Shown here in pieces: positions 7,429 to 43,820 of a stretch of 44,036 nt of DNA. The notes under the pieces were generated by a model that saw only the letters and a program-made list of their open reading frames with translations, had not been told where the DNA came from and made no database searches. A program made the position numbers and the translations under genes. The stretch comes from Guillardia theta CCMP2712 (lineage: Eukaryota > Protista > Cryptophyta), in assembly GCF_000315625.1 (NCBI RefSeq), contig NW_005434634.1, forward strand, positions 35,110 to 79,145. The letters run 5' to 3'. Position 1 is the first letter of the stretch. Each line of letters starts with the position of its first letter.

Positions 7429-8831
7429 GCTTTTGTCGGGGTGACTCGTTTCTCGACTACACTTGCAGTCCCATCTTCTTCCCTGCAGCTGGGCTTCCGT
7501 GAGGTGAGAGGAGGAAGATTATGAAAGAGAAGGAGGAGGATGAGGAAGGGGAGGGAGAAGAGGGGGGTTACGATGGGGATGGCAATTACGAAGATGATGA
7601 TACTAAGCTGGTTTCTGACTCATCCAACGCAGAGGCATCCGCTTCGTCTGGCTCCTGTCTCTGCCAGGAGGGATCGAGTAGCGAAGCAGGACATCAGCAT
7701 GAACATTGTCAAGGAGGGAGCGCTCAGAGTTGTCTCGTAAGTTCTCACTTTCTAGTTGACTTCTACCATTCTTTTTGCCCTAGTATGAATGTTTCAAACT
7801 TTCTTGTTGAGAAAGAACGACGAGCAAGTCTGAATTGTGCACACAGATGCCTGCCTTACATTCTCCCTATGATGGACTCTCTGAGCTATGGTCGTTTCCT
7901 CTTCCAGAAGGTGCGTGTGAGTGCTTGCAGGGAGCGCGTCCTGACGTGAATCTTCAAGATCCCCCTCTTGGCTTTCATCTTCATGAAGCCGCTGCAGCCA
8001 TTCGTCGAGCTTGCACAGGTAACAGCAGACGAGGATGAGGAAAGGAGGAGGATTGGAGAGGAGAGACGAGAAGGGGGAAGGAGAAGGTAGGAGTAGAGGG
8101 CAGAAGAGGAAAGCAGATGGGAACAGCGAAGTGGAGGGGAGCAGGAGGGGTGCGGGATGCTCTTTGCGTTGGATGATACTTTGCTGCAAGGCCTTCCCCA
8201 TGATCTCCTTCGTCGCTTTCCTCGGCCTCTTCCTCTTTGTCGTTCGCAACCGCAAAGTTCCTCGCTTCATCCGGTAGCCTCCTCCTCGAGCTGCCGGGGG
8301 AGCTTGTGACATGTTTGCGGCAGCTTCAACACGATGCAGGCACTGCTGCTGGAGATCCTCTTGATCTTTCCTCAGATCCTCACGAGCGGCAACATGGGTG
8401 GCCTCATCCCCTTCGTCTTCACCGAGTTCGTCTCCAACATGACCTTCTATGCCATTGCCGCCATCGTTGGTGAGGAAGAGGCGATGTGGAGGAAGAGCTA
8501 CGGGATTGGAGGAGGGAGGAGGAGGGGAGGGAGAGGAGAGGAAAGGAGAGGAGAGGAGGAGGGGGGATGGGGAGGGGATCTTGTTCAGCATGCCTCGAGG
8601 TTGAGACCTAACACTGTCATAGGGTACTCCTGCATCTCCAACCTCCGCGGGGAGCTGCCTTGCAAGATCCCGGTACATTCTCACTGCCCTTTCAATGCTC
8701 CGTTCCTCCCTCACTTCCTCCTCCTACTGCCCTGCTCCTCTGCCGGTCTTTATTGGTCTGACTCTTTCCTACAGGTCATCTCCACTGCTGTCTTCCAGCA
8801 GATCGGAGGAGGAGCTGGATTCGACGACTAG
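7429..8831 (+). CDS. TIC20: Tic20/Ycf60 family plastid protein-import channel, multi-exon; start codon not resolved
   Basis: Spliced exons CLPYILPMMDSLSYGRFLFQK, FVAFLGLFLFVVRNRKVPRFIR-FNTMQALLLEILLIFP and GYSCISNLRGELPCKIP-VISTAVFQQI. FIRFNTMQA is the Tic20 signature. The upstream exon AFVGVTRFSTTLAVPSSSLQLGFR looks like a transit peptide. Confidence 0.87.
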
Positions 8832-8984
8832 ATGTTTCTTCTCTTTCACTTCACGAGCATTTCACATACACTCTAAAGACATCACCTTTCCCTCTGCATC
8901 CCCCCCCCCCTCCGCCCCTCCTGTTGTATCCTCTTGTCCTGCCCTCTCTCTTGCCCTTTCCTCCCCGACTTCTTCCTCCTAGTT

Positions 8985-11597
8985 CTACGACACAAGGAAG
9001 TACTCCTCGTCCGTGCACGAAACCAATCCTTTCCCCAGCAGCCCGTCGAGCCACTCGTGTACCTGCTGCATGTGAGCTGGGCCCTTCAGTCATGTGCTGA
9101 CGTCACCTGTCTTGGCTTCACCTCCACCTCGTAGGTCTCGTGCAGTTGTCGGATGATGTCATCAACAGTCACGCCCTGGAGGAGAAGCAGTGAGGTGCAG
9201 AGAGGGAGAGGGAAGTAAGAAGGAAGGAGGGAGGAGAGAGAAGGGAGGAGGGATAGTAAGGGCAAGAAAGAAGGAGAGGGTCAAGACTAGAAGAGAGAGG
9301 AATGAGTCGACTCTGAAGGTGAGACAAGGGGAGGGCAGGATGAGCTTCGGTTCACATTTTGCTCTCCTTTCGTCTGCGAGATCGAATAAATGACCTCTAG
9401 CACCTACCAATGAATGTCAGCTCATCACCAGAGCTTTGCTCAAGCTTATCTCTTCCCCTCCTCCTCCTCTTCCTCCTCCTCCTCACCTCGTCCTCCATGT
9501 GTATGGTTTCTTCTACTGCAGAGACTGAGGGGATGGAGAATCAAATGCAATCCGTTCCCTCCTCCTTCACACCTTCGTTCCCTCCTTGTGCTGTCCCCGC
9601 TGTCCCCCAGTCAGACTCCATCGGCTTCCGATCGATTTCTGCCGACGAAGGGGATTTCTTCTCGAATTGCTGAAGAAACGCTTGGCAAGCTTCGTCTGTC
9701 TGCAAGACCTGGATGCTGGCAGTAAGGACGGGGAGTGTCGGAGGAGGGTTGGGAGTATACAGCAGCAGGAATTCCTTCCTGGTGCTTCTGGGCGAAGTAA
9801 ACAGACTGAGAGAAGGCGTCAGAGCAACCAGAGGTGGTCAAGTTAGGAGACGAAGAGGCTGTAGGGTTGAGAAGAGGATTGCAGGGGGAAAAGTGAGATA
9901 CCAATTAGGCAAATGGGAGATGCTGTTTATGGGGAGTGAGTGAGTGAGTGAGTGAGTTGGCGAAGGAGAAGGAGGGGAAGTAGAGAAGAGAGGAGGAAGG
10001 GCAGTTGCGAGGTTTTACCTTGAGCAAATTCTGCACTGAGGGTTTTCCGGAGCTGGTTGGGCGCGTCACGCAACACCGCGAGGAGGAAGACAAGACCTCT
10101 CGTCGGACGACAGAGAAGAAATCAAAGATTGAATTCCAACGTTTTGCTGAGAAACAGAGAATGATGACATGAAAAAGTTTGAGTTCGGAGGAGTGAGGAA
10201 TGAAAGAAAGGGGAGCGCAACTCAGGCAAGAATACTCGTCACGTACAGGATTTGAAAACAAGGTCCCTTGAGATCTTCGCCTCTTGACCTGAGTGAATCA
10301 AATCATCCCCTACTAACATTTGCAACGCCCTGCCTCCCTTTAGCTCGTCTTTACCCCCTGCCATTTCCCATCTCCCGCCTCTCGAACCTACCGCAACGGC
10401 ATTGTCGATCCATCGAGACATAGTATCCTGAGACAGACTCAACCATCTCACCTTCCTCTTCTCCCCACTTTCCCTCCCTCCCACCCTCCCTCCCTCCCTC
10501 CATGCATACATCCTTTCCTTCTCTCCATCCTACTCGCCCCCCTTCTGCCACCGATCTCCTCACCCTTTGCACCATCGCCTCCCGTGGAAGGGGAATCCCA
10601 GTTTGCAGCGAGAGGGTCTGAGCATATCTTGGAAGAAACAATCACAAGAGAGTTCAGGAGAAGGATGGAAATACTGCAGCTGTCGCGGAGTCGGTTCAAG
10701 AATTTCTCCCACATCGTTGTCATCTCTGAAGAAAGCGATCCTCAGCTTTTCATCATCACCAACATGATTGTTGTTGTTGTCGTCCCTATCTACATCTTTC
10801 ATCCATCCATCAATTACTTCCTCTCCACCATGAACGCCATCGCCACCATCACCACAAGACTCTCGCCTGTTTGTTTTAATCGCCGGATCTTCGTTAGATG
10901 ATAGTGGGTGTGATTGATAGTTCTGCAAGAAACGCAGGGATCTAAGGAGATGCAGTACAAACGATCATGCAGCTCATCCTGCTGCTCACCTGTGACCTGC
11001 TCTGCGAAAGCTTCATGTCTGATTCTTCCTTCAACTGTCAACAACATTTCACATAGTCAATGTCCCATTTTCTGTTATCATCAGCGCTCACCCAACTTAT
11101 GACTCTGGAGCACTCTGATTTGGAGTTATAGGCCTGCACGGGGACCTCCACACCCTGAACACATCAGCCGTAAGAAGCGAACAATACGCCGATGGATCAC
11201 AGACCATTCTTTCAGCTAACAGCTTCACGAACGCAAGTTGTTTCGCTGAAGATTCGTCATCAAGAAACAGGTCGTGACCGATTCATGAACATCTCTGAAC
11301 CTGTAGGTGGAGAGTCTATGATAACTGGTTGCATGCTGGCGGACTGGTCCTCATCGAATTGTGATCCATCACCTATGAGAAATGGGGTGATCGATTGTAG
11401 GCAGAATAAGCAAACAGCAGGAACCTACCTACTGACGAACTCTGAGAGCGAAACAATGCCCTCCCCATGATTGCTTCGAATTTTCGTGGCGGAGATGCTG
11501 CAAGGACATAAGTCAAAGTACAATCTGCCGCGTCAGAGGCGACAAGCAGGAGGAGCAACAGCAGGAATACTTGAGGAGCTGGATCTCTTGTTTTCAC
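8985..11597 (-). CDS. Hypothetical protein: signal-like N-terminus, three ~40 aa helical repeats, C-terminal winged-helix-like domain; multi-exon, start unresolved
   Basis: Hand-spliced via GT-AG introns: FLLLLLLLVASDA...; PPTAKQLAFVKLLAERMGVEVPVQAYNSKSECSRVISWL; EPTPRQLQYAQTLSLQTGIPLPREAMVQRDTMSRWIDNA; KPSVQNLLKSVYFAQKHQEGIPAAVLQTDEACQAFLQQF; C-terminus GVTVDDIIRQLHETYEVEVKPRQVHEWLDGLLGKGLVSCTDEEYFLVS*. Confidence 0.65.
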
Positions 11598-11759
11598 CTG
11601 TCGCTCGAAACTTTCCGCCTGATGGCAGGAGTTGACACGTCTTCTGCTTGAGGACGAGACGTCCTGTGACCGCTGAACACACCGTTGCTTTCACTGTCGC
11701 TCCTCCTGCTCCTCCTAGCCACCATCCCCGCATCGCAAGCATTGTGTCCCCTGCTTCTA

Positions 11760-11910
11760 CCCCTGGTAGCAATGTGGGGCAACGGGGGTACATGAATATC
11801 GCAGGGGTACCTTGAGTGACAGCCAGAGGGGTACTTCGTGCTTGGAGACCCCACGGCCAGGCCCATTGGGTGGGGACAATGGGGGTGGGGGTAGGGGAAG
11901 AAACAGGGGG
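11760..11910 (+). promoter_or_regulatory. GGGGTA-rich intergenic block upstream of GGT
   Basis: Repeated GGGGTA/GGGGTG runs. Shares GGGGCAACGGGGG with the block starting near 6327. Confidence 0.4.
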
Positions 11911-12254
11911 CACAGGGACATGACATGCAAAAAATGCTCTGAAGAGGCTTGAGGATGCGAGGAGGAGAAGGGGGGGAGGGGGGAGGGGGGGAGGAGGAGG
12001 AGGAGGAGGAGGAAGATTCATGATCAAGATCCGATCAAGATGAGTGTGATGAGGATAGGAAGCATGTTAGAAACTCGATCGGGGAAGGTTGCAAGAATGA
12101 GAACGAGATATATAAACGAGTCCTGCAACCAACGATGATGGTACTGTGAACGGAGATGGCAGTGATGAGATGCGGGAATAGTCCAGTGAATTCGTGACTC
12201 GCAATATTCTGCAGAACCATCGTACATCCTGTATCGTATGCATCACCCTCAAAC

Positions 12255-13549
12255 ATGAGAAGTGGCGACGACAAGATTTACGAAAAATCCTCGCTGCTTC
12301 CGACCACAGTGAGTTAAATTTCACACAACAACAACATGCTGAGCAAGTTCCTTCCCAGGCATCGCTGAATAGCAAGAGAGTTGCGATCGGAGCAGCTGTG
12401 ATCACCCTAGTCATCGTGATAGCTGTCCTGGCCTTGACCTCCTCTTCATCCAATGGCGCCTCCTCCGTCCCACTACAGGATGATACCAAAGCAGGGGGCT
12501 ACCTCAAGGACGGCAAGGAGTTCTCCATAGGAGCAGTCAGCTCAACCCATTTTCTCGCCTCTGAAGCAGGGTACCAGACTCTGAGGGAGGGAGGAAACGC
12601 TGTGGATGCCGCGGCGGTCATGCAGTTTGTTCTCAATGTGGTTCAGCCGCAGTCGACAGGGATAGGAGGCGGGTGTTTCGTGCTGCTCTACAACTCGAGC
12701 ACGGGAGAAGCAAGCGCGTTGGACGGGAGGGAAGAGGCTCCTTCCTCCTTCCACGAGAACGCGTTCTGTGGCGATGCCGCATGCGGGGTTGGGCCTTGCA
12801 ACTGCACAGGAGGGTTGATGGGGACGTACAGCGAGAGAGTAGGGAGCGGGTTTGCGGTCGGAGCTCCGGGAGTCGTGGCGGCGATGGAGAAAATGCTGGA
12901 GGAGAAGGGGACGATGAAGTTGTCTGAGGTTGTGAAGCCAGCGGTCAAGCTCGCTAGAGACGGGTTTCCAATGTATGAACATCTCCGCAGTAAGATCCAG
13001 GTTGTTGTTGTTGAGGAGGGAGGGAGGGGGAGGGAGGGGAGGAGAGGAGAAGTTGTCAGAGGTGGTGGTGGAGAAGGAGGGAGAGGATTGGTGGCGGCGA
13101 GGAAGGAGGAGGAGGAGGAGGAGGAGGAGGAGGAGGAGGAGGAGGAGGAGGAGGAGGAGGAGGAGGAGGAGGAGGAGGAGGAGGAGGAGGAGGAGGAGGA
13201 GGAGGAGGAGGNNNNNNNNNNNNNNNNNNNNNNNNNNNNNNNNNNNNNNNNNNNNNNNNNNNNNNNNNNNNNNNNNNNNNNNNNNNNNNNNNNNNNNNNN
13301 NNNNNNNNNNNGAGGAGGAGGAGGAGGAGGAGGAGGAGGAGGAGGAGGAGGAGGAGGAGGAGATTACATTGACGAGTGATGTCAGGCGGCTATTCCTAGA
13401 CTGAGAAATCACGAAGCAAGCTGTAAACTCTTCCTCAATAGCAAATGTGACGCACCGAAATTGAAGGTCGGAGGCAATGACGATGATGGTGGTGGATATG
13501 ATGATCATTGAGATGATGATGCTTGAGATGTAGATGATGTAGGAGGTTC

Positions 13550-15352: not shown

Positions 15353-15921
15353 ATGATGATGATGATGATGATGATGATTATGGCGATGATGATGATGGTG
15401 AAGATGATGATGATGGAGTTGGAGATGATGATGCTGCTGAGGCTGATGATGATGATGATGATGGAAATTTTGGTGGTGGCGGCGGAGGGTTGGTGGTGGT
15501 TGCTGTTGATGATGAAGTAGATGGGGTAACATGATTTCGATGACAACAACTATCGAAGAAAACTTGGGAACTGGAATAGTTGTCAACGGTGATAGGGGAA
15601 GGCGGAAGGAGGAGGAGGAGGANNNNNNNNNNNNNNNNNNNNNNNNNNNNNNNNNNNNNNNNNNNNNNNNNNNNNNNNNNNNNNNNNNNNNNNNNNNNNN
15701 NNNNNNNNNNNNNNNNNNNNNNCTCTGCTCCTGCCCCTTCTCTCTTCCTACAGCTTGCTGCACTAATTCTCCACCTCGTTTGTCTTGTCCTCTCCTTCCT
15801 CCTTGCGGTCGCTCATCGTCATTTTCTTCTCTCCTCCAAGTTTTGCCTCCTCTCACTTCTCCTCTGCAGTTTCGGTGGAAAGAGGCCAAGATCCTCAATG
15901 ACCCCGACGATCGGTAGCTCC

Positions 15922-25790: not shown

Positions 25791-26931
25791 CGGCGTCGTG
25801 CAGCGTAGAGTGGAGGACAGAGAGGGTACGAGGGGAGGGGGAGGAGGGAGGAGGGAGAAGAGGGAGGGAGATGAACATTGTGGATATCGTCAGGGTAGGG
25901 AGGAGAGAGGAGGAAGCGAAGTTGGCAGGATCCTGGAGAAACAAACAATCAGGGGAGATGAAGGGAAGGCAAGGGGAAGGGAGAGTGTTGTTTACGAGAG
26001 AGAGGGAGAGAGCTCTCAAATTTTTGTCTGCACATCATTTAACAACTTTAGAAAGAGTTGATTTACATACGAAATAAAGCACAAATACTCGGAGATGAAT
26101 TTTAAGCAAATTTGATAGTAAATGAACTACAAATACGTTTGAAACAATAGCAAACATGTCTGACGGGAAATCCTCTGAGACGACTTCAAGTATACACATC
26201 CCAGTGACAAGCGAATCACCATGATATGTGTCAGGACCGAGGTTCTCATGTGTTTGATCAAAACACGTATGCATATCAGTATAACACCTCTATGCCAACT
26301 ACAACACATGTTCACATCATGCTGAGATCTTCTGGAAATGAGGACAATTTCACTTCGCAACGAGACGATCAAGGACACCAACCTCTCCCTCCTCCCTGCT
26401 CACAACCTCGCCTCCCTTCGNNNNNNNNNNNNNNNNNNNNNNNNNNNNNNNNNNNNNNNNNNNNNNNNNNNNNNNNNNNNNNNNNNNNNNNNNNNNNNNN
26501 NNNNNNNNNNNNNNNNNNNNCTTCCTCGCCCTCGTCCCTGGCCCTCGTCCCTCGCCCTCCTCCCTCGCCCACCTCCCTCGCCATCCTCCCTCGGAAGAGC
26601 GAGGAGGGGGGTGGGTGAGGAAGGTTGGATGATGTTTACCTCCAGGTGCTCAAGTTTGATCCTTTCACTCCCACGAGAATGCAGAAATTCTCTCTTCCTA
26701 CGAGCGACGAGCATGAACAAAGTACGAACAATTCTTCCTCTTCCTCCTTGTCCTCTTCATCATCCACCACCACCACCACCACCACCACCACCACCACCAC
26801 CTCCTCCTCCTCCTCCTCCTCCTCCTCCTCCTCCTCCTCCTCCTCCTCCTCCTCCTCTTCCTCCTCTTATGTCTACACCCTCGCTTTGTTCTTGTGCGTC
26901 GCATTTGTATACAGTGTGAAAGCAGTGGCGA

Positions 26932-40760: not shown

Positions 40761-41615
40761 TCCATCATCATCATCATCTCCATCATCGTCGTCTTCTTGA
40801 ACGCACGTTGTCAGGCTCCAACGCAGCTGCAAACTTGTAGTTGCTCAACGTGTACTCATGCCTGTCCAGGTCACGACATGTCAAGTTTTCAAAGGACATG
40901 TCAACGTGAGAGAACAGGTGAAGAGAGAGAATGTCAGGTGCGGACTCACCCGCAAAAACTTTAACACTCGACGGCAAATCTGACGAGAAACTTCAGCACG
41001 AGCAACCTGACCCTCGGACTCTCACTTGAGACCCTCATGAGGATCTTCGCCATCTCCGCCGCTGATCCCTGACACAAGCATCACGTTCGACATGCTCCCA
41101 CGCTCCTCCTCTGCTCCTCTCCGCTCCTCCTCCCTCCGCTCCCCTCCGCTCCCCTCCTCTCTTCCCCTACTCCTCCTTGTGCTCTCCCTCCAGCTGCCGC
41201 TGGGTTCAGCTACTTCACCTCGAAGAACTTGCCCGTCCCGCCAGCAAACAACGTGTCCCCGGTGAAGACAGCAAGAGTTCTCNNNNNNNNNNNNNNNNNN
41301 NNNNNNNNNNNNNNNNNNNNNNNNNNNNNNNNNNNNNNNNNNNNNNNNNNNNNNNNNNNNNNNNNNNNNNNNNNNNNNNNNNNNNNNNNNNNNNNNNNGT
41401 TCAACTTCGGTCTTGACGTCCTAGGACGTCCACTCTGCGCATGAGGGTGGCTAATGCACCTCTCTCACCTGGCGACGCCAGCTTATCAGGTAACCATACG
41501 AAGTGCGAACAAGGAGGGGAGGGAGAGCACCTGAATGATGAGGGAAGGATCCTTGCACAGAGCTCGAGGAGGGAACCAAAACCTTGAGGGGGTCAGGAGG
41601 AGGCGGCGGAGGGAC

Positions 41616-41697
<82 letters not shown>

Positions 41698-43820
41698 ACG
41701 AGGACGAGGAGGATGAGGAGAAGGAAAAGGAGCACGAGGACGAGGTGGTAGTGGTCGTGGTGGAGGAGGAGGTAGCAGCATTACATGTCACCCTCCGCTA
41801 CAGGATCCGTCAGGCCAGGAATCGAATCTTCCCTCGATCCGTAAACCTGTGGGGGATACAAAGTCAGGCATGAGAGAGGAAAGAGAAGGGGAGGAGGAGA
41901 GACGATGACGCGAGGGGAGGTTAAAAAGGTGTACAAAAGGAGGAGAGGAGTGCAAGAGAGCAAGAGACAGATAGCAAGAAGAGCAGGAGGGGCAAGAGCA
42001 GAAGGAGCAGGAGGATCAGGAGGAGCAGGAGCAGGAGCGGGGGCAGGAGCAGGAGCGGGGGCAGGAGGAACCTTGACATCAGGAAACTTGTGTAGAATCG
42101 CTTCGTTCCCACCCGAGTGATCCCAGTGAGTGTGCCTGATGGAAATCTTTCACTCGCTTCATGTCGCAAGTTTACAGCTCTACGTCGTGAGGATCCCCGA
42201 CAAGGTCAACCCCTCCAGCTTGATGGCGGCCAGGGCCACCTCAGCGTCTGCAGGAGGAGGAACGTCGTGCGTTCAGCCTCAGGAAGACGAAAAGTTGTAT
42301 GTGGTGAAGGGAGANNNNNNNNNNNNNNNNNNNNNNNNNNNNNNNNNNNNNNNNNNNNNNNNNNNNNNNNNNNNNNNNNNNNNNNNNNNNNNNNNNNNNN
42401 NNNNNNNNNNNNNNNNNNNNNNNNNNNNNNNNNNNNNNNNNNNNNNNNNNNNNNNNNNNNNNNNNNNNNNNNNNNNNNNNNNNNNNNNNNNNNNNNNNNN
42501 NNNNNNNNNNNNNNNNNNNNNNNNNNNNNNNNNNNNNNNNNNNNNNNNNNNNNNNNNNNNNNNNNNNNNNNNNNNNNNNNNNNNNNNNNNNNNNNNNNNN
42601 NNNNNNNNNNNNNNNNNNNNNNNNNNNNNNNNNNNNNNNNNNNNNNNNNNNNNNNNNNNNNNNNNNNNNNNNNNNNNNNNNNNNNNNNNNNNNNNNNNNN
42701 NNNNNNNNNNNNNNNNNNNNNNNNNNNNNNNNNNNNNNNNNNNNNNNNNNNNNNNNNNNNNNNNNNNNNNNNNNNNNNNNNNNNNNNNNNNNNNNNNNNN
42801 NNNNNNNNNNNNNNNNNNNNNNNNNNNNNNNNNNNNNNNNNNNNNNNNNNNNNNNNNNNNNNNNNNNNNNNNNNNNNNNNNNNNNNNNNNNNNNNNNNNN
42901 NNNNNNNNNNNNNNNNNNNNNNNNNNNNNNNNNNNNNNNNNNNNNNNNNNNNNNNNNNNNNNNNNNNNNNNNNNNNNNNNNNNNNNNNNNNNNNNNNNNN
43001 NNNNNNNNNNNNNNNNNNNNNNNNNNNNNNNNNNNNNNNNNNNNNNNNNNNNNNNNNNNNNNNNNNNNNNNNNNNNNNNNNNNNNNNNNNNNNNNNNNNN
43101 NNNNNNNNNNNNNNNNNNNNNNNNNNNNNNNNNNNNNNNNNNNNNNNNNNNNNNNNNNNNNNNNNNNNNNNNNNNNNNNNNNNNNNNNNNNNNNNNNGTG
43201 GAGGTGGTGGAGGAGGAGGAGGAGGAGGAGTGAGAAGGAGCAGCCGCAAGGGGAGGGAGGGAGGGTAGGAAGGAGCAGCGAGAGGGAGGGCGGGAAAGAA
43301 GGAGGAAGAAGAGGAATGCTGATATGCACTTCCCAACAACGCACCAGCAGGGTCAACGGCCAGACATGTCTTCGACTCCTCGTCCACAATCAGAAAACCT
43401 GCGACGAGTGTGAGGTAGCGGCAAGGGGAGTAGAGCAGGAGCGTACAGTAGTTGTCATGAAGGATAGGAACGATGGTGATGTGGCAGCCGGGCATGATAG
43501 GTATCCTCGTCTGCAACAGGAGGGGAGTAAGCTCTGAGCAGGCAAGGCGTACAGATACATCACCGAAGTCGAGTGAGGAGGTTGTTTCGCACAATCTGAA
43601 CAAAGCTTCTGGTGCAACGACAGTCCGACTCTGGTCTTGTAGATGGCATACCTGCATACTGTCAGCTCTGAAGCCCGACGAGACTTGATGAGGACTGTAG
43701 AGGGAGCACTCACCCGACTGAGAACGCTCCCTTCGAGAGAGCTTGCAGCATGTCTTTCGATCTACTAGATGACAAGCGGTGAGCCTCGCAGACTGTGAGG
43801 TCTTTGTCTACAAGTGCCAT
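39680..43820 (-). CDS. Hydroxyacylglutathione hydrolase (glyoxalase II), PNKD/MR-1-like metallo-beta-lactamase, multi-exon; spans gaps
   Basis: Spliced motifs IVPILHDNY-xFLIVDEESKTCLAVDPA, GILTTHTHWDHSGGN (THxHxDH), VYGS, VFTGDTLFAGGTGKFFEG, FAGHEYTLSNYKFAAALEPDN and PSTIGEEIATNPYIR. The N-terminal GYAIYKTRVGLSL...PPHS resembles the PNKD extension. Confidence 0.9.

What the first reader, a model, noticed from the sequence alone, without database searches (positions are those of the whole stretch)
8985..11597. Uncharacterised protein with three bacterial-type 'PTxKQL' helical repeats, a winged helix and a targeting-like leader
Seen only after manual splicing. Three ~40 aa repeats share P(T/S)x(K/R)QLx(F/Y)xxxL(A/S)xxxGxxxPxxAxxxxxxSxxI; repeat 3 is degenerate. 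They are followed by a C-terminal segment patterned like the RPA32 C-terminal winged helix (GVxVDDI...V.EWLD.L...G.V..TDEEYF). From memory, the repeat resembles short repeats in C-termini of plasmid type IA topoisomerases and small alphaproteobacterial proteins; this is unverified. The hydrophobic leader suggests ER-mediated targeting. Inference: a candidate nucleic-acid-binding protein for the plastid or periplastid/nucleomorph compartment with an architecture I do not recognise.
Basis: partly seen in the sequence, partly recalled or inferred. Interest (0 to 1): 0.72.

Follow-up and report, generated by a model that had tools for sequence, protein, structure and literature searches.

The report
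Cryptophyte protein with bacterial topoisomerase-tail repeats

Summary
**What holds.** The gene lies on the minus strand. Spliced transcript contigs from three runs, plus one JGI contig, join 19 exons in one open frame of about 393 aa. The organism is Guillardia theta CCMP2712. GenBank's 271-aa model (GUITHDRAFT_109537) is mis-predicted.

- **Repeats 1 and 2** are alike (z 9.7). They are homologous to a bacterial unit that no library curates. That unit occurs in the C-terminal tails of conjugative-plasmid type IA topoisomerases and in 97-aa two-unit Rhodobacterales plasmid proteins (hhalign 98% probability, E 1e-13).
- **Repeat 3** is weak by sequence (p about 0.003 against the variant tail units) but has the same predicted helix pattern.
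- **The C-terminus** folds as a winged helix (Z 9-11 to hundreds of solved ones). It aligns end to end with G. theta's own RPA32 C-terminus (z 7.2), but stays below the Pfam cut-offs.

**What fails.** The hydrophobic leader lies inside intron 1, has no ATG, and is absent from every transcript. ER, plastid or periplastid targeting is therefore unsupported. The real N-terminus is basic and presequence-like.

**Function.** Not shown. It is most likely a non-catalytic adaptor in DNA transactions. I found no paralogue and no other eukaryotic relative, but the searches were limited. Interest is moderate.

The parts
8929..11747 (-). Transcribed span seen in spliced contigs (19 exons). Exons: 11747-11598, 11497-11427, 11370-11301, 11245-11205, 11154-11092, 11034-10990, 10922-10867, 10725-10675, 10627-10563, 10426-10390, 10286-10247, 10146-10097, 10052-10019, 9805-9759, 9706-9573, 9524-9487, 9403-9355, 9174-9105, 9060-8929.
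   Evidence: Joints and contig pieces. Missing joints solved. Exon sum of 1243 nt equals the contig length. L028 is an exact substring.
8985..11742 (-). Coding region from the first ATG in the longest contig to the stop codon (393 codons plus stop). The true start is not pinned: the frame is open to the contig's 5' end, and a second in-frame ATG (residue 59) lies in exon 2.
11498..11597 (-). Intron 1 (100 nt, GT..AG).
   Evidence: Joint 11497->11598 in X1, X3 and X9; frames
11430..11742 (-). N-terminal 71 residues: basic, rich in Ser/Thr/Ala, 11 K+R against 1 D+E, no hydrophobic core, predicted disordered. Presequence-like, not a signal peptide.
11023..11310 (-). Repeat 1 (residues 93-134 of the model; P0004 77-118), split over exons 3-6. 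A canonical topoisomerase-tail unit.
   Evidence: 23-24 bits to the bacterial unit profiles. Best single match is the Thermovibrio plasmid topA tail, 16/39 identical. pLDDT about 85.
10286..10697 (-). Repeat 2 (residues 174-215; P0004 158-199), split over exons 8-10. A canonical unit.
   Evidence: 48 bits to the profile of all units and 31.5 bits to the profile of units the query had not selected. 47% identity to the Ancylobacter plasmid topoisomerase tail, E 1e-3. Model pLDDT 90.
10271..10285 (-). KRRRS: a short basic, NLS-like patch directly after repeat 2.
   Evidence: Sequence; inference only
9652..10048 (-). Repeat 3 (residues 247-290; P0004 231-274), split over exons 13-15. Divergent, and closest to the 'variant' tail units.
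   Evidence: z 4.1, 10/3000. Same helix-short helix-helix pattern, pLDDT 72-80. Not significant against the canonical profile.
8988..9504 (-). C-terminal acidic winged helix (residues 324-393; P0004 308-377), exons 16-19.
   Evidence: H-H-H-strand-strand order in AF2. VIA Z 9.4-11.2 to winged helices. Foldseek top hit is the P. abyssi Rpa2 WH. Pfam MCM4_WHD 23.1 bits and RPA_C 16.8 bits, both below cut-off. z 7.2 to G. theta RPA32C. pI 4.4.
10726..10866 (-). Intron 7: GC..AG, 141 nt, in frame and without a stop. Occasionally retained.
   Evidence: Joint ends CT..GC, and X1 contig 10699-10813 crosses the acceptor. Part of it is kept in GenBank model P0001.

Best explanation
**Shown.** A genuine, single-copy, intron-rich nuclear gene of Guillardia theta is transcribed and spliced into an mRNA for a protein of about 393 aa. 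The parts, in order:
1. A basic, disordered, presequence-like N-terminus of about 70 aa.
2. Two canonical copies and one divergent copy of a ~40-aa unit (helix, short helix, helix). The unit is homologous to the repeat units in the C-terminal tails of conjugative-plasmid type IA topoisomerases and in small two-unit plasmid proteins of Rhodobacterales.
3. A strongly acidic C-terminal winged helix of the RPA32C/MCM kind.

**Inferred.**
- The protein has no catalytic domain and works as an adaptor in DNA replication, repair or recombination.
- The three units do whatever they do in topoisomerase tails. By analogy with other type IA C-terminal repeats, that is holding DNA or a conserved partner.
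- The acidic terminal winged helix docks partner proteins, as RPA32C does.
- Each G. theta unit is closer to a bacterial unit than to its sister unit. The unit array was therefore probably acquired from bacteria as a block and then fused to a eukaryotic winged helix.
- The protein does not enter the ER route. A mitochondrial or nuclear location is more likely than a plastid or periplastid one.
For: - **Splicing and expression:**
- **Identity of organism and gene:**
- **Repeat homology:**
  - tblastn to 186 plasmid records, almost all annotated as topoisomerase or small hypothetical protein.
  - The hosts are true type IA enzymes (Toprim + Topoisom_bac), with the units in their tails.
  - Profile of 18 bacterial units: P0004 63.9 bits.
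  - Profile of units not picked by the query: repeat 2 scores 31.5 bits and repeat 1 scores 24.4 bits, with no shuffle above 12.1.
  - hhalign 98.1%, E 1.2e-13.
  - Structure searches of the ESM Atlas return topoisomerase tails and small Pseudomonadota proteins.
- **Block acquisition:** repeat 1 against Thermovibrio scores 70 and repeat 2 against Ancylobacter scores 92, while repeat 1 against repeat 2 scores 51.
- **Winged helix:**
- **Acidity:**
- **No catalytic domain:** Pfam, NCBIfam and PHROGs find nothing else.
- **No signal peptide:**
- **Single copy:**
Against: - The function is inference only. No member of the unit family has a tested role, and no solved structure matches by sequence.
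- The unit's best structural matches are generic three-helix bundles at Z about 5.
- The G. theta units are near neutral and the winged helix is acidic. Direct DNA binding is therefore not favoured by charge.
- Repeat 3 is weak by sequence.
- The 5' end and the start codon are not fixed. The frame is open to the end of the longest contig, and a possible AG acceptor lies 4-5 nt upstream of that end. An unseen upstream exon cannot be excluded.
- The bacterial hits were first found with repeat 2 as query, so part of the profile score is circular. The control addresses this.
- No other eukaryotic relative was found, but only at limited sensitivity.
Confidence: 0.55

Rival explanations
1. One reading: a nucleic-acid-binding protein carried by an N-terminal signal peptide through the ER to the plastid, periplastid space or nucleomorph.
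For: G. theta does use signal peptide plus transit peptide for these compartments (established knowledge). The N-terminal 70 residues resemble a transit peptide in composition. The 5' end of the mRNA is not pinned, and the frame stays open upstream to 12027 with a hydrophobic stretch there.
Against: The proposed leader is intron 1 and has no ATG. There is no RNA depth at 11803-11900 in any run, including X3 at about 280x over the gene. No hydrophobic core exists in the supported N-terminus.
Confidence: 0.08
2. A nuclear or cytosolic RPA32C-like docking protein. Translation starts at either ATG, the basic N-terminus is only a disordered region, and the KRRRS patch serves as a nuclear localisation signal. 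The protein competes with or complements RPA32 in recruiting repair factors.
For: End-to-end similarity of the winged helix to G. theta RPA32C, including the shared ...DEE[YH]F..S end. RPA_C and MCM winged-helix hits. Basic patch after repeat 2.
Against: RPA_C is below its cut-off (16.8 against 22.6 bits). No OB fold is present. The N-terminus has 9 K+R and no acidic residue in its first 55 residues, which is more typical of an organelle presequence. The repeat units are of bacterial type.
Confidence: 0.27
3. A lineage-specific orphan whose helical units and winged helix are general protein-protein modules with no link to DNA metabolism.
For: No relatives with the same architecture. Acidic overall, pI 5.2. 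Three-helix bundles and winged helices both serve many roles.
Against: Both domain types have their nearest relatives in DNA-transaction proteins: type IA topoisomerases, RPA32 and MCM.
Confidence: 0.1

Closest known systems
C-terminal tail units of conjugative-plasmid type IA topoisomerases (annotated 'DNA topoisomerase', topA or topB/Topo III in Ancylobacter, Bradyrhizobium, Phaeobacter, Paracoccus, Xanthomonas, Microbulbifer and Thermovibrio plasmids). No curated family covers them.
   Same: Same ~40-aa motif, P-[ST]-x-[KR]-Q-[LIV]-x-[FY]-A ... L-P ... S-x-W-I-D, and the same predicted helix-short helix-helix unit. Canonical and 'variant' units occur together in one array. Profile and hhalign matches are significant.
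   Different: The G. theta protein has no Toprim or Topoisom_bac domain. It is encoded by an intron-rich eukaryotic nuclear gene, ends in a winged helix, and its units are near neutral rather than basic.
97-aa two-unit hypothetical proteins of Rhodobacterales plasmids (for example WP_289896919.1 and WP_020952636.1; at least 1361 clusters)
   Same: They consist of two copies of the same unit. Repeat 2 is 35-45% identical to their first unit.
   Different: They are stand-alone, basic (pI about 10.5) and bacterial, with no winged helix and no known function.
RPA32 C-terminal winged helix (Pfam RPA_C, PF08784; human 1dpu; P. abyssi Rpa2 WH 9f27)
   Same: Winged-helix fold at the extreme C-terminus; acidic. 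The pairwise alignment to G. theta's own RPA32C spans the whole domain (z 7.2). 9f27 is the Foldseek top hit.
   Different: Below the RPA_C cut-off (16.8 against 22.6 bits). No OB fold precedes it. Structure alone does not separate it from PadR, IscR, cullin WHB, Stn1 or MCM winged helices.
MCM4 winged-helix domain (PF21128)
   Same: Best Pfam score of the C-terminal domain: 23.1 bits, E 7.6e-5. MCM WH structures are among the Foldseek hits.
   Different: Just under the cut-off of 24.4 bits; no MCM AAA+ core.
DUF3072 (PF11272)
   Same: Repeat 1 matches profile positions 12-54 of 56 at E 6.5e-4. One ESM Atlas feature hit carries this family.
   Different: Below the cut-off (19.9 against 27.5 bits). 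Repeat 2, repeat 3 and all 16 bacterial units tested give no DUF3072 match.
Red-beta C-terminal three-helix domain (8tfu, 6m9k), which binds lambda exonuclease and the SSB tail
   Same: Best structural match of the repeat-2 model: Z 5.5, rmsd 2.0 over 51 residues.
   Different: Z is no higher than for unrelated three-helix bundles in the same list, and identity is 8%. This is a shape resemblance only.

Membership tests
Plasmid type IA topoisomerase tail unit (uncurated 'PTxKQL' unit) | Significant match to a profile built only from bacterial units | tested here: met
   Repeat 2 scores 48 and 31.5 bits and repeat 1 scores 23 and 24 bits; no shuffle exceeds 12.1. hhalign 98.1%, E 1.2e-13.
Plasmid type IA topoisomerase tail unit (uncurated 'PTxKQL' unit) | The third copy also matches the unit profile | tested here: inconclusive
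   Canonical profile 0.7-4.7 bits; hhalign probability 2%. The best match to the variant units gives z 4.1, 10/3000, and the helix pattern is the same.
Type IA DNA topoisomerase | Toprim and Topoisom_bac catalytic domains | tested here: not met
   Pfam finds neither in P0004. Both are found in the bacterial hosts of the unit.
RPA32 / RPA_C (PF08784) | Score at or above the Pfam gathering cut-off (22.6 bits) | tested here: not met
   16.8 bits, E 0.012. G. theta's canonical RPA32 on another contig scores 29.9 bits.
RPA32 / RPA_C (PF08784) | An OB-fold DNA-binding domain upstream of the winged helix | tested here: not met
   The AF2 model shows only helices and disorder before residue 308 of P0004; there is no OB family in Pfam.
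Winged-helix fold | Three helices followed by a beta hairpin, superposable on solved winged helices | tested here: met
   H308-325, H333-344, H350-362, E367-369, E373-375. 319 chains at Z of 8 or more; best Z 11.2, rmsd 1.1 over 66 residues. Prediction level, pLDDT 57-76.
MCM4_WHD (PF21128) | Score at or above the cut-off (24.4 bits) | tested here: not met
   23.1 bits for the domain alone and 19.6 bits for the whole protein.
DUF3072 (PF11272) | Score at or above the cut-off (27.5 bits) | tested here: not met
   19.9 bits for repeat 1 only; 0 of 16 bacterial units match.
Cryptophyte plastid or periplastid pre-protein (bipartite leader) | N-terminal hydrophobic signal peptide in the translated mRNA | tested here: not met
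   The proposed leader is intron 1. The supported N-terminus has a maximum Kyte-Doolittle value of 1.3 over 15 residues. SignalP and ASAFind are not available here.
Mitochondrial presequence protein | Basic, acid-free, amphipathic N-terminus recognised by a trained predictor or by import assay | not testable with these tools
   Composition fits: 9 K+R and 0 D+E in the first 55 residues, with amphipathic windows at residues 45-63. No predictor or experiment is available.

The most novel reading that the evidence does not exclude
A cryptophyte captured the non-catalytic tail array of a bacterial conjugative-plasmid type IA topoisomerase and fused it to an RPA32C-type docking domain. The result is an organelle (probably mitochondrial) genome-maintenance adaptor with no counterpart in other eukaryotes. 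It would also give the first functional handle on a very large bacterial plasmid domain family that no database describes.
Probability: 0.2. Interest if true: 0.65.

Novelty: new variant of a known kind. Interest (0 to 1): 0.45.

Why it matters
- It corrects a public gene model. GUITHDRAFT_109537 is given as 271 aa; the transcripts support about 393 aa.
- It shows that a bacterial plasmid module with no Pfam, NCBIfam or PHROG model and no known role (at least 1361 protein clusters) has been built into a spliced, expressed eukaryotic gene.
- The fusion partner, an acidic RPA32C/MCM-type winged helix, hints that the module works in DNA transactions. That makes the bacterial family's function testable from a new angle.
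- It also warns against reading targeting leaders from unspliced algal DNA.

Tried and rejected
- **Pfam topoisomerase repeat families.** PF13342 and PF13368, searched in six frames over the whole genome, give no hit in the window. The PF13368 hits belong to a separate topA-like gene.
- **Pfam on single exons by reference.** Nothing usable; the exons are too short.
- **DUF5710.** It sits at the end of the Bradyrhizobium topoisomerase, but it is a different domain from the PTxKQL unit.
- **DUF3072.** Only repeat 1 matches and below the cut-off; the bacterial units do not match.
- **NCBIfam and PHROGs.** Nothing for the unit.
- **PDB.** Nothing by sequence for the unit or for the winged helix. 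Foldseek with the unit model returned noise.
- **Homology searches.** The word-index search with the two-repeat alignment found no candidates. With the 271-aa model it found only the gene itself and P0004.
- **Wider collections.** The JGI metagenome scan with P0004 found no relatives, and phage genomes gave no match.
- **RPA32C by BLASTP.** With composition adjustment it found nothing. A Smith-Waterman alignment with shuffles did find it.
- **Literature.** No paper names the gene or DUF3072. A search on plasmid topoisomerase tails gave nothing relevant.
- **Stray contig.** A loose-ended X3 contig at 11699 is low-complexity (GAG)n from elsewhere, not an alternative exon.
- **Joined model.** My own joined exon model was sent to no search tool, so that step is left out. 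Searches used exon references and the database proteins P0001 and P0004. Residues 1-16 of the model were searched only as part of exon 1.
Full report
**Where and what.** The window belongs to an assembly of 87,145,349 bases in 669 contigs. The database protein that matches the gene is EKX44416.1 / XP_005831396.1 / L1J7C2, 'hypothetical protein GUITHDRAFT_109537' of Guillardia theta CCMP2712. The gene lies on the minus strand.

**Splicing**
- About twelve presumed RNA runs from several studies hold roughly a fifth of the sampled words of the 2.8-kb stretch, as spliced mRNA would.
- Laying four runs on 8700-11900 gave one contig per run that skips the same segments. Fifteen joints are listed, all GT..AG on the minus strand except one GC..AG.
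- I placed the three joints not listed by demanding the right contig length and splice signals.
- The resulting 19 exons sum to 1243 nt, exactly the length of the X3 contig. They give one open frame from the contig's 5' end to the stop at 8985-8987.
- A JGI contig of 1225 nt (sample 3300017164) is an exact substring of this joined sequence.
- The JGI contig's protein, P0004 (377 aa), equals residues 17-393 of the model.
- The GenBank model P0001 (271 aa) is wrong in three ways: it starts inside exon 5, keeps part of intron 7 and skips exons 11-13.

**How the joined model was handled**
- I joined the exons only inside scripts, to translate them and to compare them locally.
- My joined model was sent to no search tool, so that step is left out.
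- Database searches used exon references and the proteins P0001 and P0004 that the tools returned.
- Residues 1-16 were searched only within exon 1.

**The leader**
- Its 'start codon' is GTG, which is the GT donor itself. Its frame has no ATG upstream.
- The supported N-terminus begins at the ATG at 11742. Its first 55 residues hold 9 K+R and no acidic residue.
- It has no hydrophobic core (maximum Kyte-Doolittle 1.3 over 15 residues, against 2.6 for the intron peptide). It has amphipathic basic windows around residues 45-63 and is predicted disordered.
- This resembles a presequence, not a signal peptide.
- Caveats: the frame is open to the contig end, a possible AG acceptor lies 4-5 nt upstream of that end, and in-frame ATGs exist at 11793 and 12021. 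However, no run shows RNA depth at 11803-11900, even X3 at about 280x over the gene.

**The repeats**
- Repeat 1 (P0004 77-118) and repeat 2 (158-199) align without gaps. The score is 51, z 9.7, and no shuffle of 2000 reaches it.
- No Pfam, NCBIfam or PHROG model covers them. The only hit is a sub-threshold DUF3072 match for repeat 1.
- tblastn of repeat 2 against plasmids found 186 records, with a best E of 1e-3. The annotated features under the hits are, with one obvious exception, either 'DNA topoisomerase/topB' or small hypothetical proteins.
- The only match of repeat 1 is the topA of a Thermovibrio plasmid.
- The two topoisomerases scanned carry Toprim and Topoisom_bac, and three of the seven fetched sit beside type IV secretion genes.
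- The topoisomerase tails hold one to three units of the same motif, plus 'variant' units that end in ...C-x-x-[FYW]-L.
- The small proteins are two units long and form at least 1361 clusters, all unnamed.
- A profile of 18 bacterial units scores P0004 at 63.9 bits: repeat 2 at 48 and repeat 1 at 23.
- The bacterial proteins had been found with repeat 2, so I rebuilt the profile from units the query had not picked. Repeat 2 still scores 31.5 bits and repeat 1 scores 24.4, and no shuffle exceeds 12.1.
- hhalign of the bacterial alignment against the G. theta repeats gives 98.1% probability, E 1.2e-13.

**Repeat 3**
- It fails against repeats 1 and 2 and against the canonical profile.
- Its best matches are the variant tail units: z 4.1, 10 of 3000 shuffles.
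- AlphaFold gives it the same pattern of 13-14-residue helix, 4-residue helix and long helix as the other two, at pLDDT 72-80.
- I take it as a probable third, variant-type unit.

**Origin of the units**
- Each G. theta unit is closer to a bacterial unit than to its sister. The scores are 70 and 92 against 51.
- Intron positions differ between the units.
- This fits acquisition of an already diverged array rather than duplication in place. That is an inference.

**Fold of the unit**
- With a small alignment, repeat 2 models at pLDDT 90 as a compact helix, short helix, helix.
- Shape searches of the ESM Atlas return tails of type IA topoisomerases (Aquificota, Campylobacterota, Pseudomonadota) and small Pseudomonadota proteins.
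- Among solved structures the best match is the Red-beta C-terminal domain (Z 5.5). That is no better than unrelated three-helix bundles, so it says nothing about function.

**The C-terminus**
- AlphaFold predicts three helices and a hairpin.
- Re-alignment of Foldseek's candidates gives 319 chains at Z of 8 or more, all winged helices. The best is Z 11.2 with rmsd 1.1 over 66 residues.
- Foldseek's first hit is the Pyrococcus Rpa2 winged helix. MCM and human RPA32C also appear.
- The Pfam matches are all below cut-off: MCM4_WHD 23.1 bits and RPA_C 16.8 bits.
- Language-model neighbours include RPA_C and MCM winged-helix clusters at 0.86-0.87, which are leads only.
- G. theta's own RPA32 lies on another contig.
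- Its C-terminus aligns with this domain over 69 columns to the last residue. Both end in ...DEE[YH]F..S. The score is 57, z 7.2, 0 of 5000 shuffles. BLASTP with composition adjustment missed this.
- The fold is established at prediction level, and kinship with RPA32C is plausible. Family membership is not met, and there is no OB fold.

**Charge and function**
- The winged helix has 5 K+R against 15 D+E (pI 4.4), and the three units have pI 6.3-8.5. The bacterial two-unit proteins have pI about 10.5.
- This argues against a classical basic DNA-binding surface in the G. theta protein. It favours protein docking by the winged helix, as in RPA32C.
- No catalytic domain is present.
- My best reading is a non-catalytic adaptor in DNA transactions, located in the mitochondrion or nucleus. 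This is inferred from the company these two domain types keep, and is not shown.

**Uniqueness**
- Only this locus matches P0004 in the G. theta genome, and the bacterial profile finds no other exon there.
- No relative of the whole protein was found among 5.8 billion proteins within the allowed length band. None was found in JGI metagenome contigs or in phage genomes.
- These searches are of limited sensitivity for divergent eukaryotic relatives.
- No paper mentions the gene.

**Verdict**
- This is a new domain combination of recognisable kinds of modules. It is of moderate interest, mainly as a eukaryotic foothold for an undescribed bacterial plasmid module.

Noticed in passing
window 10726-10866 (minus strand): Intron 7 is a GC..AG intron of 141 nt with no in-frame stop. 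One X1 contig (10699-10813) crosses its acceptor, so it seems to be retained at times, which would insert 47 residues between repeats 1 and 2.
   Followed up: partly
window 8985-11154; P0001 = EKX44416.1: The public gene model (271 aa) disagrees with the transcripts. It starts in exon 5, keeps part of intron 7 and skips exons 11-13, so it lacks the N-terminus, half of repeat 1 and half of repeat 3.
   Followed up: yes
L006-L014 (plasmid loci) and P0005-P0124: The bacterial PTxKQL unit occurs in plasmid type IA topoisomerase tails and in 97-aa two-unit Rhodobacterales proteins (at least 1361 clusters). It has no Pfam, NCBIfam or PHROG model. In pAMI8 the small gene sits beside an antirestriction gene.
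   Followed up: partly
G000:C6:707059-707666 (L002-L005): A separate G. theta gene for a bacterial-type type IA topoisomerase with Toprim_C_rpt repeats, followed by an HMG-box-like open frame.
   Followed up: no
G000:C71:334530-334901 (L029): The canonical RPA32 C-terminal domain of G. theta (RPA_C 29.9 bits). I used it as the comparison for the winged helix of this gene.
   Followed up: partly
window 11748-12027 (minus strand): The reading frame of exon 1 stays open for 95 more codons upstream (proline-rich, then a hydrophobic stretch), with ATGs at 11793 and 12021. No RNA depth was seen at 11803-11900.
   Followed up: partly
window 13212-13311, 15623-15722, 26421-26520, 41283-41398, 42315-43197: Runs of N (assembly gaps). 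The last one explains the apparent GC of 0.18 at 42-43 kb.
   Followed up: yes
P0003 (297 aa): An unrelated protein with three AP2-like repeats matched exon 15 only through a short '...EEAAQAFLQ...' helix. This is a chance resemblance.
   Followed up: no
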